Source: Ostrea edulis (Eukaryota). From it: a stretch of DNA of 64,000 bases. Within the stretch, counting starts at the first letter, position 1. Every line of letters begins with the position of its first letter. Below, in pieces: positions 8,088-35,553 of the stretch. The stretch is taken from the NCBI RefSeq assembly GCF_947568905.1, contig NC_079167.1:11036001-11100000 (forward strand), given 5' to 3'. The translations under genes were made by a program, and so were the position numbers. The notes below the pieces were generated by a model, which did no database searches, was not told where the DNA came from, and worked only from the letters and a program-made list of their open reading frames with translations.

Positions 8088-9432
8088 CTTAACAGACTCC
8101 CACCTTTACTAGTTTACCAACATTTCTTGAAATCAGTGAGGGAACTTCATACATTGCAGATCATCTACTTCATAGCATAATTGTAACTGACCCTGGATCA
8201 TATGATTCAGTCACGTGCGAAACCAACGTTACAAAACCAGGACCAATAGAGGTCAATAATGAAACCACACATGTATTTGAAACAAGACTGAAAGATGGTA
8301 GTATACTGACTCCACAGCTTAAGTAACTAAGACTTAAGCAATTTTGTTAATAAGCGATTTATAATGAAGGCGATTTATAATGAAGGCAATTGTTTTATAT
8401 GTTGTAGTGCTATGGATGTGCACCATGGGAATTGTATTGGTTTTTGATATACCACTTTGACAGACAATTTCAAAGTTTTCCATACAGTTTGTTTGCATTA
8501 TATATGGAATTAACAGAGTCATGTGCCCATTTTGTAGTAATGCAGAATGTTATTTCGCATGTACAAGGGCAAAATTACAAATAAAATTGTGATATTTGAG
8601 CACTTTGGGGAGAAAAATCAAAATCTTTTATATACAAGCACTCTTTTCATTAATGAATCACGTACCATCTGCATGATTTTTGCGTGGCCGACTATTTATT
8701 AGTTTTCTTATAGCAGCTCAAACTTCGTCTGAAAAGGTCAATCCGCTTGTATATCTTTTTGAGTTTCACTTAACTGAGGTAATTTTCTTTCTAGATTATG
8801 GGATTTACCTCGTTAATAGCAGCGCTTTGGTATACACCTCCAACACCAGGAAGTATGACGTCACAGTACACTGCACATACGGATATACCGTGATAGAGAG
8901 CGTGTTTACTTTGTACATCAGACGGAATAATCCTCCTAACTTTACAAATCTTCCAAGTAAGCCAAAAACCTGAATTAATAATATGGAAAAATTTATGATT
9001 TTTCTTAAAAATCTGAAAACATGTAGACACTGTTTTCGCTTTTTTTGCAGGCAACATCAGCCTTGATGTCACTGCGCATGTGTCTGGTTCTCATATCTTT
9101 ACGGCTTCAGCCGTGGATACCGACACTTCTTCGTTGACTTGTAGCATTTCGTGTGACGGTTCCTGTCCCTTCCGGATAAATGGGAATACAATGTAGTAAG
9201 TTAAAGTTTAATACATGAAGAATCAGAATATCAGTTTTTGAATCACATTTCCAACAATAATTTTGCGTTTGCAATTTTAGATGGAAAGGTGAAAACAACG
9301 TCTTCTTTGTCATCTATTTCGCCCCAGACTGGCGGGTACACTATCCAAATATACGTATCAGATGGAAGAACGAATGTTGGTCCCAGAACACTAAGTGTCG
9401 GACTTTTCAGTGAGTAGTGCATAACCACCACC

Positions 9433-11574
9433 AACAAGCATTGTGAGAGTATTGCATGGCAATACATAGTCCCCTACCGGTCGCAAAAATTACTGGACCG
9501 CAACAATATTCTAAGTTCGTTATGTAGGTTATGGTAAAGAACAAATTGGGGAACCAGGATAGAAATCGTTGGAAATCAATTACTATTCAGGTACAAAGAC
9601 TAGACCATGAAAAAAGACAAATTTATAATTAGGTTTAGGTCTTTAACCAAGTCAATGAATTGTGAAATGTAGGTGATCATGAATAATTTAGCTACATTGT
9701 TGTATTACTATTCCAGGAGTTTTAATGAGTTTAGTACTCTTATCTACATAAATAAGAACTTTAAGCTCAGGTGTGGATGTGACTCTACTAGTTTTTATCA
9801 ACTTTGTAGAAGCAAACTGAAAATGTACCAATTATCAAGCACAACCAACCAAAAAAAAAAAAAAAAAATGTCCGAAAAACTGATAATTCACACTATTCCA
9901 AGGGCGAAAATCGCAGCGAAAAATCACAAAATTCAAACTTGATCTGTAACTTGTTATGGCAAAGCAATGAATCAAATATCAATTCTAAAGGACATAACGT
10001 AGGACCGAGACGAAATTATGGCAAAGCAATGCACAAAATATCAAATGACTATCAGTAAGCAAAAAAAAAAAAAAAAAAAAAAAAAGAAGTGCGGAAAACT
10101 GATAATTCATGTTATTTTTCGAAGTCCAAGGGCTATACTTTAGTGTAAAATCAACCAATCAAAACCAAATTCAAACTTGATCTGTAACTTGTTATGGCAA
10201 AGAAATGTACGAAATATTAAATGAGTCTCTGCAAAAATAGAGAAAAAAAAAGTGGAAAACTGATCATTCATGCGATTTTTCTAAGTCCGAGGGCCATAAC
10301 TTAATGAAAAATCAACGGACCAAAACCAAATTCAAACTTGATCTGTATCTTGTTATGGCAAAGCATATGGAGTGCCAAATTAACATAAACTCAGATAATT
10401 GAAGATATCTTCAATTATTTGAAGATTTCATCAATTCATTTGATACGCGCAACAATTTAATTAAAGATCTCCCCAAATAATTAATGATATATTCAATTCT
10501 GAATTATTACGCGCATTAATTAAATTGATGATAACATTGATTCTTCAGCTGAATTGATGCGCGCTTTAATCGAATTAATGATCTCTTCAAATGAATTAAT
10601 GATTTCAACAATTAAATTGATGTGCGATACAAAGCAACAATTGATGTAATGCGTACATTCAGTCAATTGATGAAAGCAATAATTGAATTGATGCGCGCAT
10701 TAATTCATTTGACGAGAGCAATAATTGATTTAATGCGTGCATGAATTCAATTATTGCTCTCTTCAATCGAATTAATATTTCTAATTCATTTGAAGAGAGC
10801 AATGATTCGTTTAAAGAGAGCAACTATATAATTAAAAGATATCATCAATTCAATTTATCCACAATTGAATTAATTATCTCTTTAATTGAATTGTTGCTCT
10901 ATATAAAAGAATTGATGTGCGCATTAATTCTTTATACAAAAGCATTGTAAATAATTAAAGATATCTTCAATTGAATTAAAGAGATCATGAAATTATTCAT
11001 ACCGAGCTCTAAATTAATCATTGCGAGCAATATTTTCTACGAAATTGATGCTCTCATCAATTGAATTGAAGAGAGCAATAATTGAATTAATGCGCGCATT
11101 AAATCAATTATTGATCTTATTAATTCAATTGAAGCACACATTAATTCATTTGATGAGAGCAATAATTAATTTAAAGCGCGCATTAATTCAATTAAAGGGA
11201 GCAATAATTGAATTGATGATATCTTCAAATAATGAAAGATATCTTCAATTATTTGAGTTTATGTTAATTTGACACTCCATAAAAGCAATGTACCAAATAG
11301 CAAATGAATATTTGCAAGGACATCAAAACAGAAGTCGGAAACCTGACAATTCATGCTATTTTTCTAAATCCAAGGGCCATAAATTAGTGAAAAATTAATG
11401 GAACAAAACCAAATTCGAACTTGATCTGTAACTTGTTATGGCGAAACAATGTACTAAATATGAAATAAATATCTACAAGAACAGAGAAAAAAGTGGGGAA
11501 AACTGATTTGCAGGACTGACGGACGGAGCACAAACCTAAAGTCCTCTTCGACTTCGTCGGTAGGGAACTAATAA
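9433..11574 (+). mobile_element. Helentron-associated non-autonomous element (HINE-like) with internal satellite-like repeats, interrupted by a MITE
   Basis: 5' aacaag.. with subterminal agtcccctaccgg (9468-9480) complementary to cggtagggaact near 11558-11569. 3' hairpin and gacggacgga microsatellite. Repeated aaaccaaattcaaacttgatctgtaacttgttatggc units. Confidence 0.7.
10366..11281. mobile_element. IS3EU-like non-autonomous DNA transposon (TATGG...CCATA termini, 6-bp TSD)
   Basis: TIR tatggagtgccaaattaacataaactc / gagtttatgttaatttgacactccata. TSD aaagca at 10360-10365 and 11282-11287. Interior is made of 21-bp repeats in both orientations. Confidence 0.75.
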
Positions 11575-14119
11575 CGTTTTATATCAAACTGTTATATTTA
11601 AACTGTGACATGAACTTTTTGGGAAATCAATTCTTTTATCAGACTTCAACAATCAACCAGCGTTTGTCAATTTGCCTACGTCCTCGGTATTTGCTCTGAA
11701 TGAGAATATCGGAACAAACCAGTGTATTTTCACGATCCAGTGGTACGATCCAGATCCCACGGACGCCGTCACCTTAACTGTTTCCTTCACACCGACTTCT
11801 GACTCCGTCTCTGTTGATGCATCATGTAAGTTGTGGGAAATTCTTCAAAATACATTTATGCACATTCCACTATATAAAAAAATCATGTAAATCAAATGAG
11901 GAAATTATGATAATGTATTTCCTGTTTAAGCTGGAGAAATTAGAACAACCAATAAAAAAGTTAAATACGAGAGCATGAGCAATCGTTTGACCAATTTAAC
12001 CTGCTCTGTGTCAGACGGAAAGACTGTGACGTCATCAATCATTGCAATACTTTTCACCAACATCAATGAAGCGCCAGCGTTTTATAAGGCTGTGTACAAC
12101 ATATCACGTGATGAAGGTTCGGTAGGTAGCAATTTTTTTTTATGAAAAAGGGCAGTTACAAGACAGAAACAATAAATTGGTAATTCAATAAATAAAGTAT
12201 GTAATTGCTTCTAATACCGTACAGTTTTAGGTTTTCATCTACATATAGATTGTTCATTCAGGCGTATATTTTATGTAACGGTTATGATTGTAGTATGGAG
12301 CAACATTCCCCTCCCCATCGTTTTCCGTCAGTGATCCAGACGAAAACGACGTTCATACATATGGAATGGAATGCGGCTCTTTCAGCAAGTACTTCGGTAT
12401 GAATGCCAGCACAGGGGAGGTCACTCTTGCTGCTACTTATCACGTGGACAGCGAGAGACCATCAACTCTCATATGTACCGCAGTAGTCTGGGATGCTGGG
12501 GGGCTTATCTGCCAACGCTAGCTTGATTATGTATTGACAGATATTAATAACCACTCGCCTAAATTTCCTCAAGAAAGATATACCTTTGCGGTGTCAGCGG
12601 AAACTCCTGTCGGTGCAAGCGTGGGGAATTTGTCGGTATCGGACAATGACGTAAATGTTTACAGTAGTTTCAATCTTACTCTGACTAATCAAGATGTGGA
12701 CTACTTTGCAATCAGTGACAATGGAAGTTTGTACGTCAACAGAAATCTGACTGATATCGGATACCAAAATGTGTAGTTTTATTGCAAAAGCGGTAGACTT
12801 CGCAGGAAACACAGGGACGGCGATCGTTACAGTATTATTTTATGATGTGAGATGTTTGCATTTTTCCTTTCTTTAAAGATCAAGATGCTCGTATGAAATG
12901 AAATGGTGTTGTAAAGAATATAATGATATCAAATATGTTTCACTTGTGTTATGATAATTTTCAGACCACATCTATCAGCTCAACCACCAGTACAACGGAA
13001 CAACTGTGGGGTTTTACCGACAGTATTGGCAATGTCCTGTGGGTAGTCGGGATGGGTACTCTATCCTTACTGTTCAGTATCGGCTGTGTTGCTTTTTTTT
13101 TTTTTTTTTTTTTTCTTTTTTTTTTTTTTTACAAAAAGTTTAAAGCCCCAGTAATCAGGTATGGACAGTATCAATAATAGCTTTTAAGACTATAAAACAC
13201 CGAGAATAATAGAATGATCTATTTCTGAGACTGAATAGCTATTTTCAGATCTATACGCAGAATTAATCAACATCCGAAACTAGCACCAAGGAAGAAAATA
13301 GCCTCGAAGGTTTCTTTCCGAGCTCGGTCACCTGATAATATGTCGGTAAATACTGATCCAGGATCAAATACAGAAATGGTTCGAACCGTGGATCAATATC
13401 TGCTGGAAGGAGAGATTTCAGTTCATAATCACGTGATGAGTGCAAAGGAAAGGACACAAAGGAAAAGGCGCTGACAAAATAAAGCTTTAGTGCAATTTCA
13501 TGTGAATAGTGAAGTGGACTCCATCATTTCTAACGAACCAGAAACAAATACAGAAAAAGTGAACATGTTGAGGAAGATTGGTAGTCATACCAGCTGGATC
13601 TTCATGCAAATTATTTGTAGGTAAAGAAAGACAAATGCTTCATTAAAATATAATGTAAGGGTATATTGTATGATATAAATCTAAAAAGAGGAAAACTTTG
13701 TAAAATGCCATACCTTCTTGCTTTCTCTAAATCTACCGGGTATGTCGTAGCCGCTGTCTGGGATTAGAAACACCACAGCAATGAATTCACACTCACATTG
13801 GGACTTTCAAATTTAATCATATAAATACATATAGATTTTCCAAAAAGAATTTTGCAATTGCTCTGTATCTGATTACATTGATAAATTACGTTATATATAC
13901 AATCAATATAACAATCGATGATGTATTGTTTGTTTCGAAATTGGATCTTCAGAATGACCATAATGCAAAACACGCTGTGGAAGATTGGTAGTCCGTGATT
14001 TAGAGAGTTTGGGCATTCATTATCTTTTTTTCAAAGGAAATAAAAAATCCCGTTGTTCAATACTTATTTGATAGGAAAACGGAGAGTGTGTTAACCAACG
14101 AGGTGTTTTTCACAGCCAC

Positions 14120-15099: not shown

Positions 15100-18000
15100 T
15101 TAGTTTATAAGGTCGTTACTTTTGGCTTTCTTGGGTTTCTTCTCTTGTTTTGGATCGTCGGGTGGCGGTGCTACGGGATCGGACGACGGAGGTGAGGAGG
15201 AGACGTTAATCAGCCCGCTGCTTCCTCCTGGAATGCTCGACGCACTGCATGATAGGTATACACATTCAAAAATTGAATTACACTCGATGTATCGCACAAA
15301 ATATCCATTACCAGGATCAAAGAACAACACATCAAATCAAATAAAAGCACATTGTTATAAAATAAAAGCAGTTGCTGACCGAAATTAAATGTACCTGCTA
15401 GTGAACGCTTTTACAGCAACATAACTTCCAGTTGCTAATAATGCTATTCCCCCCATTCCAACAGCAGTCATCCATAGCGTGTTCTTGGCGTCATTTCCGA
15501 AACTCCCCGGGGTTTCAGTCGTTGTCACAGCAACAGTGGTTGTTGTCTGTCAAATGAAAAAGTTGAAAAATACTGCTATTTTTAAACATCCAAGAATATG
15601 AAGTCCAAACTAGAAATATTTATCTTACCGGTTCAAACAAAATCACAATGTTGGCCGTTGACTCTAGTGGAGGCGACCCCAGATCTCTGGCTTTTAGCTG
15701 GAACTCGAGATAAGATCCGAAAAAATACAGGCTCAAATTCTGTGCCACGGCGAATTCTTTAGTAACGTTATCATACGAGAAATAATTTTGTCCAGATGAA
15801 TCTGTAGGCTGGTTTTCGAACCAAACACGTCCTATTGAATTGTGTGGGGCAGTTAAATCTGCATCAGTTAGCGTAATTAATCCAACCACTGTACCAAGGC
15901 TTACACCGGGCGATAAGGAATACGTGTAATATTTCTGATCAAATCGAGGCGCATTATCATTGACGTCATAAATGATGATGTACAAGTCTGCTGTGTCGGT
16001 AAGATATCCTTTATCGTATACCGTAACGTTGCACGATACCATTCTTGGAGCTCCAGTATCAACATCTACCACACGTCCAAACGAAATGGATCCGCTTGTA
16101 TGATCGAAGCTGAAGTAGCTAGTGTTTGCTCCACAGTCCAGCGTGAAGAAGTGACTATCGGTGGCGTCCACATCTGTAAAGACGTATGCTGGCGGATATG
16201 GCGACAATTGTGTACCTGCCTATAAAAATGGATGTGAAACATTTTACTTTTAAAAGTTTAGATCAGCATAGGGGATAGAATGAAACAAGACATAGTAAGC
16301 AAAGTGAAAGAAGACTGTAACTACTATATAGGATAAAGCAAAACAAGACTGCTACACATCATAGTGGGTGAAATGAAAGAAGACTGTGAGTAAAGTGAAA
16401 CAAAACTCTGCAACGTTTTCTGTTTGCTTTGGTCTCGATTTTGAATTTCTTAGAGGATTATGTGATTATTAGTTATTTTCACCTTTTTCATCATAGTGGG
16501 TTATGTGAAAAAAGATTCTGTAAATCATAGTTGGTAAAATGATAAGACTATGCTGTGCTGAGGTCAAACGATACAGATTTGTTATAAACGTAATTTGTTA
16601 TATCGTAATATGTTTAAAACTACAAGGAAAATTACTTCGCTGTAAGCACGGATTCATTTTAAGCATGTTCGCCGAAACCCTGTTTTATTGTAACCTATCA
16701 CAAGGGTCATAGTGGGTAAAGAAAATAAAACTGACTTACTATAGTGGGTAAAGTGAGACAAAACTCAGCAACTTACCTTAGTGCTTAAAGTGAAACAAGA
16801 CTCATCAACTGATCATAGCGGGTAAAGTGAAACAAGACATAGTGGGTAAAGTGAAACAAGACAGTGGATAAAGTGAAACAAGGCATAGTGGGTAAAGTGA
16901 AACAAGACATAGTGGGTAAAGTGAAACAAGACTCATCAACTGATCATAGCGGGTAAAGTGAAACAAAACATAGTGGGTAAAGTGAAACAAGACATAGTGG
17001 GTAAAGTGAAACAAGACATAGTGGATATAGTGAAGCAAGACATAGTGGGTAAAGTGAAACAAGACATAGTGGGTAATGTAAAACAAGACATAGTGAATAA
17101 AGTGAAACAAGACATAGTGGGTAAAGTGAAATAAGACATAGTGGGTAAAGTGAAAGAAGACATAGTGGGTAAAGTGAAATAAGACATAGTGGATATAGTG
17201 AAACAAGACATAGTGGGTAAAGTGAAAGAAGACGTAGTGGCTGAAGTGAAACAAGACTGTAACTCACTGCTCCTTCGTTAGCAGTGACAGTGTACACAAT
17301 TGTCTGGAAGGTTGGAGCCTCGTTGATGTCTCTGATGTGAATTCGAAATCCATTGCTAACTGTTGAGGTACCATCACTTACTACAACTGTTATATAGTAA
17401 TTTGTTCTTGGCAAGGTTTCATAGTCTATTTGGGTATTGCTTGTGTATACATCCGCTGTAAACAATGTTTTTGGCATTAATCTGACAGAATTCACAATAT
17501 TCCCTATTTCAGATAAAGGTTGTTTTCAGACAGACATAAATTACTTACTGTTGTCCTTGATGGTAAAGTAAGTCCAGTCTCCATTAGTTATTGTGAAAGT
17601 CGGTGTCAGCGTGTCTACATCAAGGTCATAAAAGGTCACAGTAAACAGATACTGGTTAGGGGGTATGTTTTCGTTGATGACGATGTTATTAACTGTGGGA
17701 AGGCTGATGAAAGATGGGCTATACCGGTAACCTGTATATAACGGAACAAATTAAAACATGTGGTTTTACAATACAAATATGATCATTACACAATTCAAAT
17801 CAAGGGCCTCAGAGTCGACATGTCCACGATTTCCAACGAGGGAGGGTATATACAGCACAATTTTATGAGCTTTAATTTTCTTTATCTTTAAGGTATGGTA
17901 AAACAAAAGTGTTATGCTTAACTAGATATCTGTGGAATTTCAAGATCATAAACTAGGAACACGACACATCGGCTTGAGGAATTTACCCACAAAAGCTTCA

Positions 18001-21000
18001 AAAGTTGTGTGAACATCAAGTTAAAGATCAAAGGTCACTAACCATAGTACCCACACATCACGCATTGGTATATGTCAAATATCAAAAGTCTACCACAAAA
18101 GACAGTAACAGTCCGGACTCAACTATTTGCAGCAGGTATCGATACAAATTATTCTCTTGAAGTCTTCAAATATTTTGATTGCCTCTTCCTTCGTCTTGTT
18201 TACATGAAGTATTCCCGCAAAAATGTACCACGTGAGAATATAATGATGTTAACTCGTTCGTTGTTTATTTATTTAAACAAAGCAAATATAGAATTCATTT
18301 ACTCATTTCAGATATATTTTTCTAGGAAGTCCCGTAGTGACCTTGACCTTTGACCCCAAAATCAATAATGTTATTCTTCTCTTGATAACAAAGCTACATA
18401 TGAAGTATCAAATCAATCGAACAAAAAAATGTGGCCTGTACATAGAGTGTCTCCAAACTCAATTTAACACACACACACACATGGTCCCGTTAGTACATGT
18501 ACATGTATATCCCTTCTAACAATGGATTGCGAGGGGATAATAACTTACCGGTAAGGTGAACCGGTATATATCTAGTTTTCGATTTCGTCTGACCGTCTGT
18601 TACGGAGAAGCCCACGTTAAAACCACCCTTCCACCATCCTGCCATGCTTTGGTTGTACTCTACCAATCCCGCTTTCAACGTGAAAAATAACGAAATAAAG
18701 CAGATCCTGTCTAATATCATGAGATTCAAGGTCCTCATCAAATAACAAAATGTTTCCTTAAATCTTTAACAAATCAAAATCTCGGTTGAATATTAACAGC
18801 TTTATTCAGTCCAAACTTACTCGTGTCATCTAGCATCCAAAGTGGACATGAATAAGGCCCACAGTATTCAAAGGCGTATGTGAATTGTGAGTTATCTGGA
18901 TCTGTGGTAGCTAGAGTTATGAAGTCAGTCATGTTGGGTCTGGAACTGGCACTGTAGGAATAACCGGTGGCTGTGTAAAAAAAGATAATGCACTATGAAC
19001 TATAATGATTTAAAAGAATTCAAAGTGGAATCATGATGAATATTGTGATAGTACTTGCACATACATGGTTGTATTTTTACCGTTAGAAATATGCCATTTT
19101 TCAAGGTATGAGCAAGAAGACAAGTCACAACTTACTGTTGGTATTGTATAACAGAATCTATCACTTACCTGGAATGTTGCTTAAGAAGGGTCGAACGTTG
19201 CGCTGCAGGAACAATTTGAAATATCCAAAAACAGGACTATTTTTTCCATCATTGCAGGAAAGTTTTATTGTGTATTTCTTTGTGGTGTCATAACTAAAAC
19301 CGGGGTTGTCGTTTAAAACCAAATTGTAACCTGTAACATATGACATGATGAACACCATTTCTCCATCATTATTTGATATACGATACTGTATGGTTCTAAA
19401 TTGCACTTACTCATCGAGGAAGCACCGTTGAGAACAAAATTGGACGTTGCAGACGATGGATCGACTGATTCAATTGCACAGGTCACTGTGTTATCCGTGT
19501 CGTCTTCCACGGTCAGCACGTGGAGGGTTATGCTGGTTTGCTGGTTCTCCGACAACGTCATAACCGCGGGTAGTGACGTTATTCGTGGAGGCTGAATTGC
19601 ACATATAATAATTTTAGAATCTACCACGGTTATTACGAGGATCAAAGAAATGCTGCAGTCATTATTCTGCGATATACCATCATACGTTATAACTGATTAT
19701 GAGAAAATTGATAATCATCTCGCTTGCACTTCGTATTTTGCTAATTAAAGTTGATGGCTGATAATACAATTTCAGAATCATAAAAATCAATCAATATATG
19801 TTGTAAAACAAATTCATAAATGACTGAGGAACATTTGTCATTCAGTATAATTATCCAATCGTCTGCATTCCGAGAGAGATACGTGCAAACATGGCGATAC
19901 ACAAACAAGTTTTTCTTGAACTGTGTATTCAAAGCAATTGATTTAATCCATTAACATCAAACTAAATATTTGAAATACTTTTAAATTACTTGAAATAAAA
20001 TAGATTTAGAATACCCCTACCATCTCACCTTTTTCGTCAGCAAAAATCAATGTAGGCCATTTAGGAAACTGCCATGACGTCACAGTGACCTAATTCGTAG
20101 CTATATAGGAAAGTGATTGACTGTTTATTTCTGAGTCAACGTAGAATAGAAATAAAGTTCTTGTTTTCATGTGTGTTGCAGGGTAACCTCCTTGGTCTCG
20201 AAATATTGTTTGAAATATAAGAGCCTCGGCTTTTATATTTCAAAACACATTTCCTCGACCTCGGAGGTAATCCTGCAACATACATGAAAACGCGATCTTT
20301 ATTTCTTAATTATACACGAGTAACCTTTCTCAAGGGAAATTATGGATGATACGGGATATATTTCTCATCCCCCTACTTACAGTATTGGAAGCTGTTACGG
20401 ACAACGAGCCGCCGGATATGGTGGTATTAAGACAAGTCTTCCTGGCAGTAAACGTCATTACGTATGTCTGCCCAGTGACGAGTGTTGCACTAGTACTCAC
20501 ACTGCCTGTGTTTGCAATAAAAGTAGTTATGGCTGTACGCATGCAGAGTGAGAAAAAACAAATTTGATATCAAATAGAATTTTTCTGATGTTCTAAATTC
20601 ACCTGTGTCGGAATTCCAAGTGAATTTTCCACTTGGATCACTCATGGACTTGGTTAGCATATCCTGCGAACGTTGTCCAATCACAAAATTGTACACTGGT
20701 GTTCCGGACGGAGCGCTGTCATAGAGATGTATTGTCCTGCCTGAGTTTACAAACCACAACTCGCTCGTATCTGAAAATATGAATCCAAAAGGAGTTTGGA
20801 AGTTTCGTACATGCAGCTACGTCAATAAAAAGTTCTTCTTAAACAGTAGCTGCAGATATGTAGCTTAAACAGTAGCTGCAGGTATGTAGCTCTCTGGAAA
20901 AATATTGGGACAGATCAGAGAGGTACAGATCCACCCATTATAAGTATTCTTACATCGCCAAAAAATTGCATTAAAGCCCCATGCGACCCGAGAATTCACA

Positions 21001-24000
21001 GCTTTAAATGACTTCGTTTGTAGCCACTTATTTTTATTATTCTTTGAATATATAGCTTTCACAACAATCATAAGAATTGTTAACAATATAATGAAATATT
21101 TAAATCATTACACTTTATCCAGGGCAAATATGCCGGTAAACCGAAAGTTAAGAATTTTATGATTATTTTCTTCTTCTAATTCCTAACACTGAATGAATAA
21201 AGATCATTCTTGCAGAATGAATTGAACAGAAGATTTGTGAAGGGTGTGGTTTCGTGGTGAAGAAAGCTTCCTTTAACTCTGTATAAACTTTAGAGCAGCC
21301 ACTTTCACATTAAAATCAGATAAAAAATTAACATTAAAATCAGATCATAGTAGTATTCGCCCTATGCATGCACCAAAATAACGGGATTCCAGAATCCTTT
21401 GTGTAAAATAATCACGTACCATTTTCCAGATTGAGTTTAATGGCGAACTGAGCGTTGATGGTTGTGGAGGAAGACACACTTTTTGTGGTGCCGACTGTGG
21501 TAACTCCCCAGGAGAAGCGCTTCTGGTTGTTACTTCCGCTGGACGACGTGTACGGTATTATTTCCTGTCCAGGACTGTACCTATCCGGATTAGAAATTTA
21601 ACAAGTTAAATGAAGATTATTTATTTCTCTAGAATTGGAGTACTTTAATGATTTGTCTAACCATATTGTTGAAGAAGGAAAGATATTACCATCCCACTTT
21701 GTCTCCATCGTTTACCGTAATTCGTTCATTATCTGGGACTGTGTACTTCACAATTCTGTTAGTGTTGGAAGCTAAAAGCGATAGACAAAGTGTAAAGGAT
21801 TTGCGATGAGGCAATTTAACAAAACGCTTTAACGATTATGTAAGAGTGACGTACAATGTACGTATAAGTAGTTGTAGCCAACCAGTTTGTAGGATGAGGA
21901 TCCGGAGACGGGACGCCAAATCTGTAGGTAAATAGAGCCAGACCTTTTGGGATAGAAAGTCCAAGACTCAATGCTCCCACAACACGATATGGTGGACAAA
22001 GTGTCCTCAAGGATGTACGTTACGCCTGAGTGAACAAAGGTTTTTGAAATATTTCAGAATGATTAAATGGGCGGTTTAGATAATTCACAGATACCTTATA
22101 ATTTTCTTTTGAAAATAAAACCATTCAGCAAAACATAATCAAAGTTGTTTATACCTGTATTGCTATTGAGAGATGAAGTTTTTGATACATCACCGCCTCT
22201 TTCAAAGCCACCACCGGTATCGCAATCTGCAACGAAAACGTCATACAATATGTGTAGAGAATATCACATGATGAAATTCAAGGAGTATTCCATCTGTCAT
22301 ATACGTATTCTCCCTTTCATGTTAATACGATTTTTTAATAGAAGAATGATTTGTCATTTATTATCGAACTTTCAGCAAAAGAAGAATAATCCATCAAATT
22401 GTAATTAAAGATTTACCAATATCTGCGTAGTTTTTATTCTTAGTATTTCAAATTATAGTTAAAATTTATTTTGACAGTTTTGTACTCTTCTGAAGTTTCT
22501 GCATTGAAATGTTAATGTTAATTCTTGGCCTTTTCCTGGAGCATTTCGGTGAAGGGTCCTCACGATCAGCTGAATTTTAATAATAATTTCAGATGCTAAC
22601 ATTGCCATGGTGTGTATATTCGGATAAGAATTTACAATGATGTCCTCCTGTCCTCCGTAAGGACACAAATAAATCTAAGAAGAATTATTTTAGCACACTA
22701 AAACTGATGTCTTCCCTTCCATTTTCCATAGTTTACGTAAAAGGTCAAGGTAAATGGTCATCAAAAATGTTACGCGACACACTATCTTATCAGGGTATAC
22801 CAACATACCAAATATCAAAGGCCTATGTCAAGACAAAAAATTATGGTTCGAACAAAAAAACCCAACCCAAATTCTTTTTATCATTTGACCTTTACATAAA
22901 AGCTTAAGGTCAAAGGTCATAAAAATGAAACACGACACAGTTATATAATGGTATACCAACATACCAAATATCAAAGGTCTATGTCAAAAGAGAAAAAAGT
23001 TATGGCTCGGACAAACTTTGTAAGAGAAGAGGAATTCACATTAAAACATGTCCCCCTTCCAAGGGGGAGGGGAGACATAAAAACATCAACACGCGTCATA
23101 GGGTCGGGGGGGGGGGAGGGGGGGGGGGAGGTGTTGGTCCTGAGTCACCTGAAAATGCAATATAGAAAAAGAACCCCAAAACACAAATTAACACAAAATT
23201 TCCAGAGATTTGGTAATCACAGTCGAAAATTGTTCTAGATTTGAATGGTGAAAATAATGTTTGATGCCTCATAAAATGAGAGTACCAATTCAATTCAATT
23301 CTTTATTGTCCTTGAGTAATACAACTCATCGGAATACATCTAGAACATGTACATGTATACACACAATATATCTAATTTTATAAGGTAACAACAGGTGAGT
23401 GGACAGTAGAAGATAGGAGAAGAAATACCAAACTCCCGGATGCGTAACTCGGACGCAGTTTACCCCAAGATTGATCAGAGGTATAAATGTCTAGATGTTG
23501 CGTGATTGGCTAATATCAAGAGTGAAATTATTTGGAATTAAAAGAAATATTATAGAAGTTTAAATTAATTGTCGGGATGAAAAATTATCGCATAAAATCG
23601 AGAAATGACTGAGGAAATTACCATGGTAGGGTTGTGTTTGAAATAAAAGGTGTAATTCATTGCAGACCGTTATGTGTTGTAAAAAAAAAAGTACTAATAT
23701 GACCTATAAAAGCAACGGTGCCCTATATAATTTTTAAAATCTTTTTTTTAAATTAGGACTTGAAATGAACTTTCAAATGCTGGGGTTCTTTGTCTAAAAT
23801 TGATATAGTTAATTAGTGAGGGGGCAAAAGGTTAGTATTAAGGTATATGGGAAAAGAATTGGTACTCTCTTTCCTTTAGTGTTAATAAGAGCATGAAGAG
23901 AATAAACAGATAGCGCATTCAACATATATTAAGAGTCTGAATCTTCCCAATCACCATGAATCTGGAAATATAATACTCAGAGTATGAAGTGAATAAAAAA

Positions 24001-24845
24001 TAAACATGCCATTGATTAGGAACCGTCCAGTTTGAAAATACCACGCCACAGAAAATATATTAATGAACAATTTGAATAATTTTCCTTGGCAGTAATAGTG
24101 TAAACTGTACTTACACCAAGGACATGGGACCTTGGATTGGACGAATGCTGACAGAGTAACCGCTAACTGCGAGTATTCGGTTTGTAGGTAGTGGGAGGAA
24201 TCCTGGGCAATATCTATTAACATGGGAACATCCAAGTTGTTTCCGATTCCGACGGAGATGATGACGATTCCGGCAGCTTTGGCGAGATCAGCCTCACTTC
24301 GCTCGTTGTCATTGGAAACGCCATCTGTTAGCACCACCATAATGTTTGTGGCAGATGCACGGTCACCTGAAATTCAAGTATTAGTACAAGAGGTCAACAG
24401 GTAATTAATTGTTGTCCTATTTCTTAATTTGGGCATGTATTAATTTATAATTATTAATTATAATGTATTAACACTTTCAATTCAATACGAATTCTGAGTG
24501 ATACATTTCAAACGACCCATTGAGAAAAAATACCCTTGCTCGAAACAAACATATTCTGTCGGGTGAATTCCATGGCACTTCCAATTTTTGTCCCTCCGCT
24601 ATTATAATTAATATTCATGATGGCAGTTTGCATGCCAGTGACCGAAGTGTATGCATTGAGATGAAATATAGTTCTTTGTGACGACTGGAAACACATCACC
24701 CCGACCCGGACGTTGCCAGAATTAATGTCCAGCAGAGCTACCGTGTCCCTCAGCGCCTCCAGGGTCAGCTGGAAGTTGGGGGCTCCTACCGAACCCGACT
24801 CGTCTGTGACAAATATGATGTCGGACTGGGACGGGCCGCATCCTC
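15100..24845 (-). CDS. Multi-exon gene for a VWA + uncharacterised beta-rich module + 6 cadherin-like repeats + single TM protein (non-classical cadherin); 5' exon not found
   Basis: 17 GT-AG exons chain in frame with no stop: 24845-24534, 24366-24115, 22226-22155, 22025-21855, 21771-21690, 21580-21420, 20770-20603, 20505-20381, 19591-19411, 19330-19169, 18970-18821, 18671-18549, 17731-17549, 17455-17268, 16219-15629, 15546-15395, 15244-15100 (3218 nt, about 1072 aa). Cadherin motifs: IDYET, DINEAPTF, DVNDNAPRF, LTDAD, ARDLG. TM: TLWMTAVGMGGIALLATGSYVAV. Tail ends SNDLIN*. Confidence 0.9.
16268..17257. repeat. 24-bp intronic minisatellite (catagtgggtaaagtgaaacaaga), degenerate towards lower coordinates
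   Basis: Regular copies at 16800-17257. Source of the spurious FHFTHYVL / CFTLPTMS ORFs. Confidence 0.92.
17930..18545 (+). mobile_element. HINE-like fragments (ggtcaaaggtca / gaccttgacctttgacc motifs, CA microsatellite, 3' hairpin)
   Basis: Motifs shared with 22700-23090. 3' end tatatcccttct..gcgaggggataataa. Confidence 0.45.
19987..20310 (+). mobile_element. Interspersed repeat with a 129-nt palindrome (possible non-autonomous Crypton-type element)
   Basis: Inverted arms gttttcatgtgtgttgcagggtaacctcc / ggaggtaatcctgcaacatacatgaaaac (20163-20291). A reverse-orientation relative lies at 49925-50236. Confidence 0.6.
22700..23090 (+). mobile_element. HINE-like element fragment
   Basis: Two similar units (gggtataccaacataccaaatatcaaagg) and terminal hairpin catgtcccccttccaagggggaggggagacataaaaa. 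Confidence 0.55.
24115..24845 (-). CDS. von Willebrand factor A domain (two exons) of the cadherin-like gene
   Basis: Translation SDIIFVTDESGSVG...VRVGVMCF...GGTKIGSAM...IMVVLTDGVSND...IISVGIG. MIDAS residues DxSxS (DESGS), T (GGT) and D (LTDG) are all present. Confidence 0.92.
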
Positions 24846-25585
24846 CTGTAATAAATTAAGAATTTTAGACATAGAAGCATAAATTCTACACCGGACTCAT
24901 ATGTCACGCATACTTATAATTAGTCTTTGTTGCCGTCAAATTTTGATCCATGCATGGGGTTTCGGCCGAGAGTGAGTTGTTTATTGTGACAAAGCCTAAG
25001 CCCATCATGAAACGAGTCTTCCATTTCAAAGTCATATCCGAAAGACCCACGACTTTCACTTTTAATGCCGGGCACTTGGCGAAGAAACAGTGAGGAAGCG
25101 AGTGCGCTAACCATTACATGCTACCGGGGCGGGTGTAATTTGACAAATAATTATTAAGAAAATTCTAATTTTATATATGATACAGAACAATATTGCTGTA
25201 GCAAAAATGAAAACAGAAAATTTAATTCTATTATAAAGTCATCCCAAGACGAAATTATGTGGCGTAACTTATCGTTAACATAATTTATACAATATGAAAA
25301 AGTTTGATAGTCAAAGTGAAATAAGTTTTATTTTGTAAAAAAGAAATTGATAGCAACATATTTTGAAAAATTCAATTTCACTTGCAAACGCAAATAGATT
25401 GGTTCATTGCCTTTATCTACATTTTTTGTATCGTATAACTTCACTTTACGCCAAGTCGCGCCTTATAACGTCCTGGGATTGACAGAACAATACGTTTAGC
25501 TTCTGTGCTTCCATTTTGTTGTTACTGCTCTATGTAATATGAAATTCAAATTTTGATCATCATTGTTCATCAAATTGAATAATAA

Positions 25586-25713
25586 NNNNNNNNNNNNNNN
25601 NNNNNNNNNNNNNNNNNNNNNNNNNNNNNNNNNNNNNNNNNNNNNNNNNNNNNNNNNNNNNNNNNNNNNNNNNNNNNNNNNNNNNNNNNNNNNNNNNNNN
25701 NNNNNNNNNNNNN
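25586..25713. other. Assembly gap (128 N)
   Basis: Run of N. Confidence 1.
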
Positions 25714-28050: not shown

Positions 28051-29917
28051 CTTTTATTTTTTGGGAGCATATTTGAGAAATTCATATTTTACAACTAGTT
28101 TACTTTCATTTCTGTCGAAATTCCCAGCCGTTAAAATAGACGTACTATAGTCATCAAATAGTTATGTATTCATACGCATATTGTTTATAACTGCATGAGG
28201 AGATGTCTATCGTTACAATTTGTAAAGATATCAAAGGCACCCCCCCCCCCCCAAAAAAAAAACCCCATGAAATGATATACCAATCCTCTTCACAACGGAT
28301 AACACGCATCATTCAATATGCCGTTCTATCCAACATACCAGTGTGTGAATGGGGCTCCAAGTATATACACCATTTGATATACATGTACTTTCATAAATGA
28401 AACATATTTCTTAAAGTTTTACATTTGCAGTTGTAAACATTGCGCGTATGAATACCGATAAATATAGTGCGTCTTTATTAACGACTGGGGATTCTGGCAC
28501 ACGTGAATGTAAGAAATTAACTTCATTTCATATGAAACTAAAGCGCTTCATAAGAAATATGTCGGATTGTGTTTTCGATTCTTTTATTTTAAAAACACCA
28601 TACTTTGATGTCAAATTCATTTCGTATTACATGTATAAAAATCACAAGACTTTCACGTATATGTAAAGATTACCTCATTCATACGATTTGAAGATACTTC
28701 ATTCAATCATAAAGTTGCAGATATTTTGTCAGAAACATTGTCATAATATTTCAAACCTAATGCATTTCAGGCAGATCAATTAGTTGTGCTCTTAGTCATG
28801 CTTTACCAGACACTAAGTAAAGTTAGGCGTTTCTTATTCAGAAATCAGCAATCTACACTTCCCGCATCACCAAACCAATAGCCGAGTTCAAATTTCGTTG
28901 CAACTCGGCTAAAAAGTTTGAGTTTTTGCGGGCCTCGGAAAGGCTCCTTTGGTATGTACATGTATAACCCTTTAAAAGTCTAGATAACTCAATTGTGAAT
29001 ATGATAGGACAAGTTCACGATATTCAGAAAGTAATCAGTACATTTCATAAGACTCTCGAAAGTTTTGAATATACATGCAAATCTCGATATTTTACATTAT
29101 TATACATTACTTAATCCGTTTTAGTTTGTGAGCATCATTTCCATTTGCTGTACATTACCTTGTCCCAAATTAAAAAACTGAAATGTAACAACCATAAACA
29201 GAATCCAGTCCACCATCGTCATGTCACATCAAAATTATCCCCCCAAAAACACACCTCTCATTTCATTCTTCGTACTAGACAAACGAGAGTGATTAAAGAT
29301 CCGAAAAGATCAAATTCAATAATCGTGATTCGTTTGATTTCACTCCAAAAGGATTATAGACCAGTGCGACTTCTTTCTCATTGTTAACGACATTATTTCA
29401 ACTTTTATTGTTTTTTAAATTCTTTAAGTTATTCGCTAATCAGTCACAGACCATTAAACAATGCTTTTATCTGAAAGATAGTTCCAGCACTTTGTACCGG
29501 GATAGGAAAGTCCGTAAAGTAAAAGAAGTCGGCTTTGACTGCATTGTTCCTCTGTATTGGTAAAATATCAAACACTAACAAGTGCAAACTGTCACATTTG
29601 ATATCTGAATATCTATACAATCAGCGGCGCATTTAACAGATGTTGAATGGCTGTTATTACATTTCACTCTGTAAAAGTGATATTTTTGAAATTGCTAACA
29701 GTATACATTGCCTCCTGAACTGGTTTATGGACAGTAGAATACACGTACATTAAGGGGGCATTAGCTGTCAATTTGTCACCAAATATTGAATTCAATGAAA
29801 ATTGTTCTATATTATATATTTCAGTAATAACACCACCAGTATCTAATTATTTTTCAAACACAGGGAATCAGGAAAGTTTCCAGAAATTGGCGCCATATTT
29901 TAGATAGATCGAAAGAG

Positions 29918-30729: not shown

Positions 30730-31177
30730 GTCGCTAAACCTGTTAGATGATGTTGTACGAATCATCTGGTACCTGAACCTGTTAGATCATGTACGAATCA
30801 TCTGGTACCTGAACCTGTTAGATCATGTACGAATCATCTGGTACCTGAACCTGTTAGATCATGTACGAATCATCTGGTACCTGAACCTGTTAGATCATGT
30901 ACGAATCTTCTGGTACCTGAACCTGTCAGATCATGTTGTACGAATCACCTGGTACCTGAACCTGTCAGATCATGTACGAATCACCTGGTACCTGAACCTG
31001 TCAGATCATGTACGAATCACCTGGTACCTGAACCTGTTAGATCATGTACGAATCATCTGGTACCTGAACCTGTCAGATCATGTTGTATGAATCATTTGGT
31101 ACCTGAACCTGTTAGATCATGTACGAATCTTCTGGTACCTGAACCTGTTAGATCATGTATGAATCATCTGGTACCTA
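30730..31177. repeat. 36-bp minisatellite (tggtacctgaacctgttagatcatgtacgaatcatc), about 12 copies, some 39-bp variants
   Basis: Read directly; produces the IIWYLNLLDHVR ORF. Confidence 0.95.
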
Positions 31178-32743: not shown

Positions 32744-33704
32744 ACAAGAGGCCCAGGGGCCTTATAGGTCACCTGAGTATCATGTAACAACCTTCCAATG
32801 TTTGAATTAGGTTTGTGTTTAGATATAAGAATTTTACTTTTGGATGGAAGAAACATTGAATAGCTATGTGGTCATGAAGTACATGTGTCATTTTTATGTT
32901 CAATCAATAATCCTTTTTAAAAAACCTAGGTCTGAGACATCATAAAGAAAAGGGTTATTTACTCCTTAGATAAAACCAATATAAGAAGATTTTCAAAGAA
33001 TTTCTACATTTCCACTATATGACCAATAGAGCCCCACCCTAACACAAGAACCCCTGCCCCAGGGGCCATGAATTTCACAATTTTGGTAGAGGGCTCAACG
33101 CTCATTATAATTATGTCCACAGTTTGGCTTCTTGATGTCCAGGAGTAAAGAAGAAGATTTTTTAAAATTACACTCATTTTGATAGTTTTTGCCCCATCCC
33201 TCAGGCCCCAGAGGGGCAGGGACCACGAATTTCACAATTTTTGTTCCCCTCCACCCACAGATGCTATATGCCAAAATTGGTTGAAATTTGTTCAGGGGTT
33301 TCAGAGAAGAAGCTGAAAATGTTCAAATGTTAACGCACGACGAACGACGACGGACAAAAACAGAAGATTTTCAAAGAAATATTGCATTTTCACTATATAA
33401 TCAATCAGCCCCGCCTTTGCACCAGAACCCCTGACCCAGGGGCCATAAATTTCAGTTTTGAAAGAAGCATCCTTGATCATCATTATCATACTATAAGTTT
33501 GTCTACTTAATACCCAACAGCAGAGGAGAAGATTTTCAAAGAAATAAAATGCATTTTCACTATACGATCAATAGGTCCCCACCCTAATACCAGAACCCCT
33601 GACCCAGGGGCCATGAATTTCACAATTTTGAAAGAGGCATCCTTGCTCATCATAACCATGCTATTGGTTTGTCTACTTAATACCCAAGGACAGAGAAGAT
33701 TTTC

Positions 33705-33738
<34 letters not shown>

Positions 33739-34451
33739 GAGCCCCACCCTAGCACCAGAACCCCTGATCCAGGGGCCATGAATTTCACAATTTTTAAAGA
33801 GGCATCCTTGCTCATCATTACCATGCTATTAGTTTGTCTACTTAATACCCAGAGACAGAGAAGAAGATTTTCAAAGAATTTCTACATTTTCACTATATGA
33901 CCAATAGAGCCCCACCCTAACAAACCAGAACCCCTGATCCAGGGGCCATGAATTTCACAATTTTTAAAGAGGCATCCTTGCTCATCATTACCATGCTATT
34001 AGTTTGTCTACTTAATACCCAGAGACAGAGAAGAAGATTTTCAAAGAATTTCTACATTTTCACTATATGACCAATAGAGCCCCACCCTAACACAAGAACC
34101 CCTGCCCCAGGGGCCATGAATTTCACAATTTTGGTAGAGGGCTCAACGCTCATTATAATTATGTCCACAGTTTGGCTTCTTGATGTACAGGAGTAAAGAA
34201 GAAGATTTTTTAAAATTACACTCATTTTGATGGTTTTTGCCCCATCCCTCAGGCCCCAGAGGGGCAGGGACCACGAATTTCACAATTTTTGTTCCCCTCC
34301 ACCCACAGATGCTATATGCCAAAATTGGTTGAAATTGGTTCAGAGGTTTCAGAGAAGAAGCTGAAAATGTTCAAATGTTAACGCACGACGAACGACGACG
34401 GACAAAAACAGATAGCAATAGGTCACCTGAATGATTCAGGTGACCTAAAAA
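32744..34451 (+). mobile_element. HINE element carrying Cg170-like ~165-bp satellite monomers
   Basis: 5' acaagaggccc...aggtcacctgag; 3' palindrome aggtcacctgaatgattcaggtgacct followed by aaaaa; monomers aagattttcaaagaa..cactatatgac..gaacccctg..catgaatttcacaatttt. Confidence 0.85.
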
Positions 34452-34733
34452 TTCACTCTGCAGGCAGAATTCACCAAGAATATAAATTAAAAACAAGAAA
34501 GATTGACTAAGCATGCAAAAACAGCTGCATAGATAAAAAGAGCGGAGGCAACATATAAAGTTACGTACACTGGACCTATTAAGGTCTGCATGATTTACAA
34601 GTACATGTGGGACCAGACCAGGTGGCAATTCAAGGTGGTAAGGTTCCTAGTTTTAATTTAGTGAACTGGAAAGCCTTGGTATATTTTGCTATTAGATCAC
34701 GTACACAACTTCCTATAATTGTAACAAATCCCA

Positions 34734-35553
34734 GTCCACCCTGAAGTCTTGTATCTGTCCTTTGAACAGTCCCATACTATTACAATAGTGAGTCCACCCT
34801 GAAGTCTTTTATCTGTCCTTTGAACAGTCCCATACTATTACAATAGTGAGTCCACCCTGAAGTCTTTTATCTGTCCTTTGAACAGTCCCATACTATTACA
34901 ATAGTGAGTCCACCCTGAAGTCTTGTATCTGTCCTTTGAACAGTCCCATACTATTACAATAGTGAGTCCACCCTGAAGTCTTGTATCTGTCCTTTGAACA
35001 GTCCCATACTATTACAATAGTGAGTCCACCCTGAAGTCTTGTATCTGTCCTTTGAACAGTCCCATACTATTACAATAGTGAGTCCACCCTGAAGTCTTGT
35101 ATCTGTCCTTTGAACAGTCCCATACTATTACAATAGTGAGTCCACCCTGAAGTCTTTTATCTGTCCTTTGAACAGTCCCATACTATTACAATAGTGAGTC
35201 CACCCTGAAGTCTTGTATCTGTCCTTTGAACAGTCCCATACTATTACAATAGTGAGTCCACCCTGAAGTCTTTTATCTGTCTTTTGAACAGTCCCATACT
35301 ATTACAATAATGAGTCCACCCTGAAGTCTTTTATCTGTCTTTTGAACAGTCCCATACTATTACAATAGTGAGTCCACCCTGAAGTCTTTTATCTGTCCTT
35401 TGAACAGTCCCATACTATTACAATAGTGAGTCCACCCTGAAGTCTTTTATCTGTCCTTTGAACAGTCCCATACTATTACAATAGTGAGTCCACCCTGAAG
35501 TCTTTTATCTGTGCTTTGAACAGTCCCATACTATTACAATAGTAAGTCCACCC
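34734..35553. repeat. 58-bp minisatellite, about 14 near-identical copies
   Basis: Unit gagtccaccctgaagtctt(g/t)tatctgtcctttgaacagtcccatactattacaatagt; period 58 (34734, 34792). Confidence 0.97.

What the first reader, a model, noticed from the sequence alone, without database searches (positions are those of the whole stretch)
15100..24845. Intact cell-surface protein with an unusual VWA + unknown module + cadherin architecture
Seen: 17 exons splice into an uninterrupted ~1070-aa reading: MIDAS-intact VWA, a ~130-aa non-cadherin module, six cadherin-like repeats, Thr stalk, one TM and a ~54-aa Ser/Pro/Lys tail with no catenin-binding motif I can recognise. The three distal repeats lack canonical Ca2+ motifs, while the three proximal ones keep DYE/DxNE/DxND. 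Known: MIDAS VWA domains bind ligands metal-dependently (integrin I domains), and classical cadherins and protocadherins do not start with VWA. Inference: the cadherin repeats act as a stalk presenting a VWA/lectin-like ligand-binding head, possibly a lineage-expanded mollusc adhesion or recognition receptor family.
Basis: partly seen in the sequence, partly recalled or inferred. Interest (0 to 1): 0.72.

Follow-up and report, generated by a model that had tools for sequence, protein, structure and literature searches.

The report
Oyster cadherin with VWA head
This is a real, intact and conserved oyster gene for a surface protein that puts a metal-dependent binding domain and an unnamed domain on top of six cadherin repeats, a domain order not described in bilaterian animals, and nobody has studied what it does.

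Summary
On the minus strand, 17 GT-AG exons give an open 1069-aa reading. Sixteen exons lie in 15100-24845. A signal-peptide exon lies outside the range, at 29159-29222, and is inferred from orthologues.

The order is signal peptide, VWA with an intact MIDAS site, a 143-aa module with no Pfam or PDB match, six cadherin repeats, Thr stalk, weakly hydrophobic TM and a 47-aa tail. Repeats R4-R6 are clear and keep Ca2+ motifs. R1-R3 are degenerate but score above all 500 shuffles.

RNA-like contigs confirm several splice junctions, but none shown bridges exon 3 to exon 4 (VWA to module). Two other species carry the same exons in the same order in compact 5-6 kb loci. One is 77% identical, with dN/dS about 0.06. 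So this is one conserved gene.

The module is not DUF4082. It also caps a 3565-aa cadherin of the clam Solemya velum, which matches the oyster protein best at both ends and shows no VWA. The oyster gene therefore looks like a short member of a module-capped cadherin subfamily that gained a VWA. Hedgling is the known VWA-cadherin precedent, but there is no Hh domain here.

Function is inferred only: metal-dependent ligand binding on a cadherin stalk. No family expansion was seen. Earlier scan notes cover this window only.

The parts
29159..29222 (-). Exon 1: start codon and signal peptide (21 aa plus 1 base, phase 1 donor AAG|GTAATG). Inferred.
   Evidence: Best phase-1 ATG and hydrophobic exon candidate. 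Same size, phase, donor and upstream context as the orthologue's exon 1, L001 1903-1963. The orthologue's signal-peptide exon is itself conserved in a third species, L010 499-561. An RNA-like contig extends 73 nt beyond exon 2 but not into 24848-25400. Not directly checked with reads.
24115..24845 (-). Exons 2 (24845-24534) and 3 (24366-24115): VWA domain with intact MIDAS, residues about 22-205, bounded by phase-1 introns.
   Evidence: Pfam PF00092 at E 6e-22 and 2e-10. The exon 2/3 junction is seen in a spliced RNA-like contig, X2 record 13. Nearest solved sequences are collagen VI alpha-3, mussel PTMP1, MIC2 and the integrin alpha-2 I domain.
21420..22025 (-). Exons 4 (22025-21855), 5 (21771-21690) and 6 (21580-21420): unnamed 143-aa module, residues 206-348, bounded by phase-1 introns.
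   Evidence: The exon 4/5/6 junctions are in RNA-like contigs X1 record 4 and X2 record 9. No Pfam hit exon by exon and none for the contiguous Solemya homologue. No PDB sequence hit. Homologous to residues 39-178 of Solemya velum KAL5014827.1, E 1.7e-18, with the same three-exon split. 80% identical in the orthologue, dN/dS 0.047.
20381..20770 (-). Exons 7 (20770-20603) and 8 (20505-20381): degenerate cadherin-like repeat R1, residues 349-445.
   Evidence: Local cadherin profile 14.8 bits against a shuffle maximum of 7.2. Both exons are seen in RNA-like contigs.
19169..19591 (-). Exons 9 (19591-19411) and 10 (19330-19169): degenerate cadherin-like repeat R2, residues 446-560.
   Evidence: Local cadherin profile 11.6 bits against a shuffle maximum of 7.4. 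Exon 9 is in RNA-like contig X1 record 1. Similar to repeats of the Solemya cadherin.
18549..18970 (-). Exons 11 (18970-18821) and 12 (18671-18549): degenerate cadherin-like repeat R3, residues 561-651. This is the most conserved part.
   Evidence: Local cadherin profile 10.2 bits against a shuffle maximum of 6.7. 89% identical in the orthologue, dN 0.053.
17268..17731 (-). Exons 13 (17731-17549) and 14 (17455-17268): cadherin repeat R4 with DxD, DYE and DINEAP motifs, residues 652-774.
   Evidence: Local cadherin profile 27.9 bits. Junctions fixed by comparison with the orthologue.
15629..16219 (-). Exon 15: cadherin repeats R5 and R6, residues 775-971, with DVNDNAP and DAD motifs.
   Evidence: Pfam Cadherin 25.2 bits, below the 28.8 cut-off. 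phmmer gives CELSR1 at 1e-30 and protocadherins, and 6734 cadherin hits in the representative library.
15395..15546 (-). Exon 16: Thr-rich stalk and probable Gly-rich transmembrane segment, residues 972-1022.
   Evidence: Hydropathy 1.51 at residues 998-1016. Aligns with the TM region of the Solemya cadherin.
15100..15244 (-). Exon 17: 47-aa Ser/Pro/Lys cytoplasmic tail with a conserved KKPKKAKS motif, and the stop codon.
   Evidence: No Pfam hit. 51% identical in the orthologue with KKPKKAKS kept.

Best explanation
A single, intact, expressed gene of the flat oyster encodes a 1069-aa type-I membrane protein of the cadherin superfamily. The organism name comes from earlier scan notes and was not checked here. 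From the outside in, the protein has a collagen-VI/matrilin-type VWA domain with a complete MIDAS metal site, a 143-aa probably beta-rich module with no named family, three degenerate cadherin repeats without Ca2+-binding linkers, three canonical repeats with them, a Thr stalk, a TM segment and a short basic tail. SHOWN: the reading frame, the domains, several splice junctions, conservation of the whole exon chain in two other species, and strong purifying selection on every part. Also shown is homology of the module, of R1-R3 and of the membrane-proximal end to a giant module-capped cadherin of the clam Solemya, which shows no VWA. INFERRED: the gene is a shortened member of a bivalve module-capped cadherin subfamily that acquired a VWA cassette by insertion of phase-1 exons. 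Also inferred is how it works: as a heterophilic receptor or anchor. The distal VWA, perhaps with the module, would bind an extracellular ligand through its MIDAS metal, as collagen VI, PTMP1 and integrin I domains do. The cadherin repeats would act as a spacer, stiffened by Ca2+ only near the membrane. The short tail would carry no catenin signalling.
For: Gene model: 17 GT-AG exons, open 1069-aa frame.

Splicing: spliced RNA-like contigs cover exons 2/3, 4/5/6 and parts of 7-10 at similar low depth.

Orthologues: L001+L002 have the same 17 exons. Of the 16 lengths measured, 13 are the same and three differ by 3-6 nt. Introns are 74-401 nt, including only 401 nt between the VWA and the module. 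The protein is 1063 aa and 71-89% identical across the extracellular domains, 76% over the stalk and TM, and 51% in the tail. L010 is colinear from signal peptide to TM in a third species. dN 0.14 with saturated dS gives omega about 0.06 overall, and 0.025-0.16 in each region except the signal peptide (0.50) and R4 and R5, where dS was too saturated to compute a ratio.

Domains: VWA by Pfam, MIDAS residues present and conserved, nearest solved VWAs are ligand-binding ECM or adhesion domains. Cadherin repeats.

Solemya relative: the module matches Solemya KAL5014827.1 residues 39-178 at E 1.7e-18. R1-R3 hit only that protein among the 150 giant cadherins (E 1e-55). Its membrane-proximal end is the best single-stretch match to R4-TM, 83 bits against 60 or less for the others. 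No VWA was found in the 7.8 kb between the upstream gene and the Solemya gene.

Exon phases: the VWA and the module are each bounded by phase-1 introns.
Against: No contig shown bridges exon 3 to exon 4 or exon 1 to exon 2, so the link from VWA to the rest rests on phase, colinearity and conservation, not on a transcript. Exon 1 in this window is inferred. The runs are only guessed to be RNA, and they come from an organism coded differently from the window's, with 1-3% differences. The TM segment is below the classical 1.6 hydropathy threshold. No ligand, tissue or phenotype is known. The module's fold is unknown: the AlphaFold model of the Solemya homologue reached only pLDDT 51. Absence of a VWA in Solemya rests on one incomplete gene model that lacks a signal peptide.
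Confidence: 0.6

Rival explanations
1. It works as a cadherin in the usual sense. The module-capped distal repeats would mediate homophilic or cadherin-to-cadherin binding, as the tips of giant cadherins such as CDH23/PCDH15 or Fat/Dachsous do. The VWA would be an accessory, for example for cis-clustering or matrix tethering.
For: The module plus R1-R3 is the part shared with the Solemya giant cadherin, which shows no VWA. R3 and the module are the most constrained parts.
Against: The distal repeats lack Ca2+ linkers, and no known adhesive-tip motif was seen. The VWA keeps a perfect MIDAS under omega 0.07, which argues for its own ligand. Nothing was tested experimentally.
Confidence: 0.22
2. 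The VWA exons and the module-cadherin exons are two transcription units, or mainly give a VWA-less isoform from a promoter in the 2.1-kb intron 3. The fusion would then be a reading artefact.
For: No RNA contig shown crosses exon 3/4. The Solemya relative begins, as annotated, just before the module and without a VWA.
Against: Exon 3 ends and exon 4 begins in phase 1, with no stop codon and no ATG or signal peptide of its own for the module. In two other species the same intron is short (401 nt in L001) and the exons are colinear. VWA, module and repeat contigs have similar depth in the same run.
Confidence: 0.07
3. It is a bilaterian descendant of hedgling that lost the Hh domain and most repeats.
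For: Hedgling is the one described family with a VWA in front of cadherin repeats (PMC4054682).
Against: The signal peptide splices directly onto the VWA in the two other species and, as inferred, in O. edulis. No Hh-like reading frame was found in 12 kb upstream. A module sits between the VWA and the repeats. The nearest cadherin relative shows no VWA. Hedgling is reported to be absent from bilaterians. Hedgling sequences could not be fetched for a VWA tree.
Confidence: 0.04

Closest known systems
Hedgling (choanoflagellates, sponges, cnidarians)
   Same: A transmembrane cadherin-superfamily protein with a VWA domain N-terminal to the cadherin repeats (PMC4054682).
   Different: Hedgling is defined by an N-terminal Hh domain directly beside the VWA. 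It is very large, with many repeats and often EGF, TNFR or furin domains. Here there is no Hh domain, an extra unnamed module follows the VWA, and there are only six repeats. Hedgling is reported only outside Bilateria.
Solemya velum KAL5014827.1 (hypothetical protein, 3565-aa cadherin)
   Same: It has the same unnamed module at the N-terminus with the same three-exon split, followed by R1-R3-like degenerate repeats. Its membrane-proximal repeats and TM are the best match to R4-TM.
   Different: It is about 3.3 times longer, with some 30 repeats. No VWA was found upstream. It has a different 130-aa cytoplasmic tail. Its gene model lacks a signal peptide.
Collagen VI / matrilin-type VWA domains, mussel PTMP1, integrin alpha I domains
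   Same: VWA fold with a DxSxS...T...D MIDAS site. These are the nearest solved sequences. They are the model for metal-dependent ligand binding.
   Different: Those proteins are secreted matrix proteins or integrin inserts. None sits on a cadherin stalk.
CELSR/Flamingo, Fat and protocadherin EC repeats
   Same: R4-R6 match their repeats and keep the Ca2+ linker motifs.
   Different: No 7TM, EGF or LamG domains. Each repeat is split between two exons, not one large ectodomain exon. There are no conserved cytoplasmic motifs.

Membership tests
Cadherin superfamily | Two or more consecutive extracellular cadherin repeats | tested here: met
   phmmer gives 6734 cadherin hits and CELSR1 at 1e-30. 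The local profile finds six periodic repeats in both species. Pfam Cadherin on exon 15 alone scores 25.2 bits, just under the 28.8 cut-off.
Cadherin superfamily | Ca2+-binding linker motifs (DxD, DRE/DYE, DxNDNxP) | tested here: met
   Present in R4-R6 (DLDVD 686, DYE 722, DINEAP 754, DVDAT 790, DVNDNAP 859, DAD 893) and conserved in the orthologue. Absent from R1-R3.
Classical cadherins | Cytoplasmic catenin-binding domain | tested here: not met
   The tail is 47 aa with no Pfam family and no hit among 150 cadherins.
Clustered and non-clustered protocadherins | Six or seven repeats encoded in one large exon, with protocadherin cytoplasmic motifs | tested here: not met
   R1-R4 are each split between two exons and only R5 and R6 share one exon (exon 15), so the six repeats span nine exons. 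The tail is unrelated.
Hedgling | N-terminal Hh (hedge) domain immediately adjacent to the VWA | tested here: not met
   The signal-peptide exon splices straight onto the VWA in the two other species, and as inferred in O. edulis. No candidate reading frame upstream.
Hedgling | VWA followed by multiple cadherin repeats and a TM | tested here: met
   but with an extra module in between.
VWA domain with functional MIDAS | DxSxS, T and D metal-coordinating residues | tested here: met
   DESGS 36-40, T107 in GGTKIG, D140 in TDG, all conserved. Metal binding itself cannot be tested here.
DUF4082 (companion note's suggestion for the module) | Match to the Pfam model | tested here: not met
   No Pfam family at E up to 0.1 for the exons or up to 10 for the contiguous Solemya homologue.

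The most novel reading that the evidence does not exclude
The 143-aa module is a new extracellular domain family that caps a lophotrochozoan, or wider marine invertebrate, cadherin subfamily. Oysters would then have built a VWA-on-cadherin receptor independently of hedgling. Its head (VWA plus module) would bind a matrix or foreign ligand through the MIDAS metal. This would be a second, convergent invention of the VWA-cadherin design, and the first in Bilateria.
Probability: 0.35. Interest if true: 0.6.

Novelty: new variant of a known kind. Interest (0 to 1): 0.45.

Why it matters
Cadherin classification in bilaterians has no class with an N-terminal VWA. The only described one, hedgling, is used as a marker of pre-bilaterian adhesion machinery. 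A conserved, constrained oyster gene with VWA, a new module and six repeats shows that this design can arise again by exon shuffling. It also gives a small, tractable protein for asking what a MIDAS head does on a cadherin stalk. The unnamed module, shared with a giant clam cadherin and seen in an unidentified marine eukaryote, is a candidate new domain family at the tip where cadherins usually recognise partners. The value is moderate. There is no function, tissue or ligand yet, and lineage-specific domain shuffling of extracellular modules is common in molluscs.

Tried and rejected
1. Representative-library search with exon 15. It was swamped by giant multi-repeat cadherins and no orthologue could be retrieved. 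It did later supply the Solemya relative, through a local search of the 150 fetched proteins.

2. Word searches. These were exon-sized queries, so only proteins of 0.55-1.75 times the query length were seen. Only close oyster-type genomic reading frames came back, and none for module exon 4. This says nothing about full-length or distant kin.

3. The spliced 1069-aa protein and the spliced module have no reference, so they were not handed to Pfam, AlphaFold, the protein searches or the contig look-up.

5. AlphaFold on the contiguous Solemya module with a shallow fragment alignment gave pLDDT 51 and pTM 0.37, mostly strands. The wide PDB fold search gave nothing above Z 3.8, so no fold is claimed. 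Further fragment alignments were misaligned by MAFFT and dropped. The second fold job was not used.

6. The metagenome scan with the module motif found one locus only.

7. No Hh-like exon in the 12 kb upstream.

8. The GPCR neighbour of the orthologue is not in this window.

9. Literature searches for a described VWA-cadherin protein in molluscs found only proteins carrying one domain or the other.

10. The N run at 25586-25713 lies in intron 1 and was left as it is.
Full report
WHAT IS THERE

The window is AT-rich eukaryotic DNA with one N run at 25586-25713. Earlier notes of this scan name the genome as the flat oyster. I did not test that. On the minus strand between 24855 and 15100 there is a chain of stop-free stretches. 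A search for GT/AG sites that keep the frame joins them into an open reading.

Exon 2 begins at 24845 behind a good acceptor, in phase 1 and without an ATG, so a 5' exon must exist. The best candidate is 29222-29159. It reads MTMVDWILFMVVTFQFFNLGQ plus one base, with donor AAG|GTAATG. It has the same length class, phase, donor and upstream context as exon 1 of the orthologue. An RNA-like contig also runs 73 nt past exon 2 without landing anywhere in 24848-25400.

Comparison with the orthologue corrected two junctions: the exon 13 acceptor to 17731 and the exon 14 acceptor to 17455. The final model has 17 GT-AG exons and 1069 aa.

TRANSCRIPT EVIDENCE

Public runs X1 and X2 are labelled as a guess at RNA and belong to a differently coded organism. 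Their contigs differ from the window by 1-3% and skip the predicted introns:
- 24743-24532 joined to 24364-24156 (exons 2/3).
- 21771-21687 joined to 21577-21420 (exons 5/6).
- Pieces that end exactly at exon borders: 21855, 20511-20381, 19591-19409 and 20734-20602.

The small offsets are letters shared by both sides of a joint. Runs X3 and X6 cover introns as well and are DNA. No contig listed crosses exon 3/4 or exon 1/2, so the link from the VWA to the rest is not shown by RNA.

CONSERVATION

A word search with exon 15 found genomic reading frames 76-96% identical. One of them lies on a 7.4-kb Logan contig, L001, which carries VWA reading frames upstream on the same strand.

tblastn of the model shows every part in order in L001. 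I built its exon chain and took the 3' end from L002 of the same species. The result has the same 17 exons. Thirteen of the 16 exon lengths measured are the same and three differ by 3-6 nt. Introns are 74-401 nt and one is a GC-AG intron. The protein is 1063 aa.

Identity by part:
- VWA 76%.
- Module 80%.
- R1-R6 71-89%.
- Stalk and TM 76%.
- Tail 51%.
- Signal peptide 24%.

dN is 0.14 against a saturated dS, so omega is about 0.06 overall. By region it is 0.025-0.16, except for the signal peptide (0.50) and for R4 and R5, where dS was too saturated to compute a ratio. L003 is the same species as L001 at 99%.

A third species, L010, is colinear from signal peptide to TM within 5.6 kb. In L001 the intron between the VWA and the module is only 401 nt, and a divergently oriented GPCR gene lies 790 nt upstream of exon 1. 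This makes a two-gene reading unlikely.

DOMAINS

VWA. Pfam PF00092 hits exons 2 and 3. The MIDAS residues DESGS, T107 and D140 are present and conserved. The nearest solved sequences are collagen VI alpha-3, mussel proximal thread matrix protein 1, MIC2 and the integrin alpha-2 I domain.

Cadherin repeats. Exon 15 matches thousands of cadherins, with CELSR1 and protocadherins on top in the PDB. Pfam Cadherin is just under its cut-off on that exon alone. The other repeats are split by introns and cannot be handed to Pfam whole. I therefore built a repeat profile from 4484 repeats of the 150 fetched cadherins and ran it on the spliced proteins locally.

It finds six periodic repeats in both species, strong for R4-R6. 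Taken alone, R1-R3 score 10-15 bits, above all 500 shuffles. The module scores nothing. Ca2+ motifs are confined to R4-R6.

Stalk, TM and tail. The TM is Gly-rich, with hydropathy 1.51 in O. edulis and 1.35 in the orthologue, below the classical threshold. It is placed and aligned like the TM of the Solemya relative. The tail has no family.

THE MODULE

Exon by exon it has no Pfam family, no PDB sequence match and no word match. A local phmmer of the spliced module against the proteins already fetched gave one clear hit: residues 39-178 of P0140, E 1.7e-18. P0140 is NCBI KAL5014827.1, a hypothetical 3565-aa cadherin of the protobranch clam Solemya velum.

That protein is the only one of the 150 that matches R1-R3 (E 1e-55, colinear at 227-474). 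Its last repeats plus TM are the best single match to R4-TM, 83 bits against 60 or less for the rest. In its locus the module is split into three exons at the same places.

No VWA is detectable in the 7.8 kb between the upstream gene and the Solemya gene's first annotated exon. That gene model lacks a signal peptide, so its start is unsure.

The contiguous Solemya module has no Pfam family even at E 10, so DUF4082 is not supported. It also has no PDB sequence match. A marine metagenome contig, L009, carries two module-like exons in an unidentified eukaryote.

AlphaFold on the Solemya module was of low confidence: pLDDT 51, mostly strands. The fold search gave nothing above Z 3.8. The fold is open.

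COMPARISON WITH WHAT IS KNOWN

[quoted passage not shown] It is reported from choanoflagellates, sponges and cnidarians only (PMC4054682; bioRxiv 10.1101/2019.12.17.880039). So a VWA ahead of cadherin repeats is not without precedent.

This gene fails hedgling's defining feature. The signal peptide joins the VWA directly and nothing Hh-like lies upstream. Its nearest cadherin relative shows no VWA.

The VWA and the module are each bounded by phase-1 introns, the usual signature of shuffled extracellular modules. I therefore read the gene as a short member of a module-capped bivalve cadherin subfamily that gained a VWA, convergent with hedgling. This is inference.

The papers held that mention both domains in molluscs or corals describe separate proteins.

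FUNCTION

Nothing here tests function. The intact and constrained MIDAS, together with its nearest relatives, favours metal-dependent binding of an extracellular ligand at the tip. The repeats would act as a spacer, rigid near the membrane and flexible distally. A cadherin-style tip interaction through the module and R1-R3 is the main rival.

LIMITS

- The spliced protein could not be passed to the family, search or fold tools because it has no reference.
- The word searches see only proteins of similar length.
- The spread of the family beyond oysters, and any expansion, therefore remain untested.
- The only extra copy seen is a decayed one next door.

Noticed in passing
window 8731-13093, + strand: A tail-to-tail paralogue fragment covering R2 (second half), R3, R4, R5, R6 and the TM, 26-41% identical. 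It has an in-frame stop in the exon-15 equivalent (near 12500-12560) and stops in the read-through between the R4 exons. No VWA or module was found. Retrotransposon reading frames lie just upstream at 2023-3158. It looks like a pseudogene, in agreement with note s1-271651.
   Followed up: partly
window 16814-17257: A 24-nt tandem repeat (18 copies in two blocks, about 90% matches) fills most of intron 14. It creates long false reading frames on the minus strand that run on from exon 14.
   Followed up: yes
window 19600-20400, 20800-21000, 22600-24000, 25000-25200: Intron stretches with contig depth hundreds to thousands of times that of the exons in the DNA runs. These are high-copy repeats, and they account for the much longer introns in this species than in the orthologue.
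   Followed up: no
L001 5049 (donor of exon 9): The orthologue uses a GC-AG intron where O. edulis has GT-AG at the same position.
   Followed up: partly
window 29407-29458 and L001 1688-1737: A 52-nt stretch 75% identical between the two species, about 185 nt upstream of the start codon in both (blastn E 0.006). It may be a promoter or 5'UTR element, or chance.
   Followed up: no
L001 332-1114 and L003 374-1156, minus strand: A rhodopsin-type 7TM receptor gene lies head to head with the orthologue, 790 nt from its exon 1. It is not present in this window.
   Followed up: partly
L008 10001-10111 (Solemya velum KAL5014827.1): The annotated first exon of the giant clam cadherin has no signal peptide, so that public gene model is probably incomplete at its 5' end.
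   Followed up: no
L009 166-306 and 716-799: A marine metagenome contig from an unidentified intron-bearing eukaryote carries two exons with the module's motifs (GCCGxIxxW, LQVWR, GDxVGW). The module is therefore not confined to the bivalves seen here.
   Followed up: partly
window 37245-38240 and 45936-46226, + strand: Long exons of an unrelated multi-pass membrane protein gene. Tandem arrays also lie at 30737-31176 (36 nt), 33362-34140 (170 nt) and 34733-35553 (58 nt), between it and the cadherin gene.
   Followed up: no
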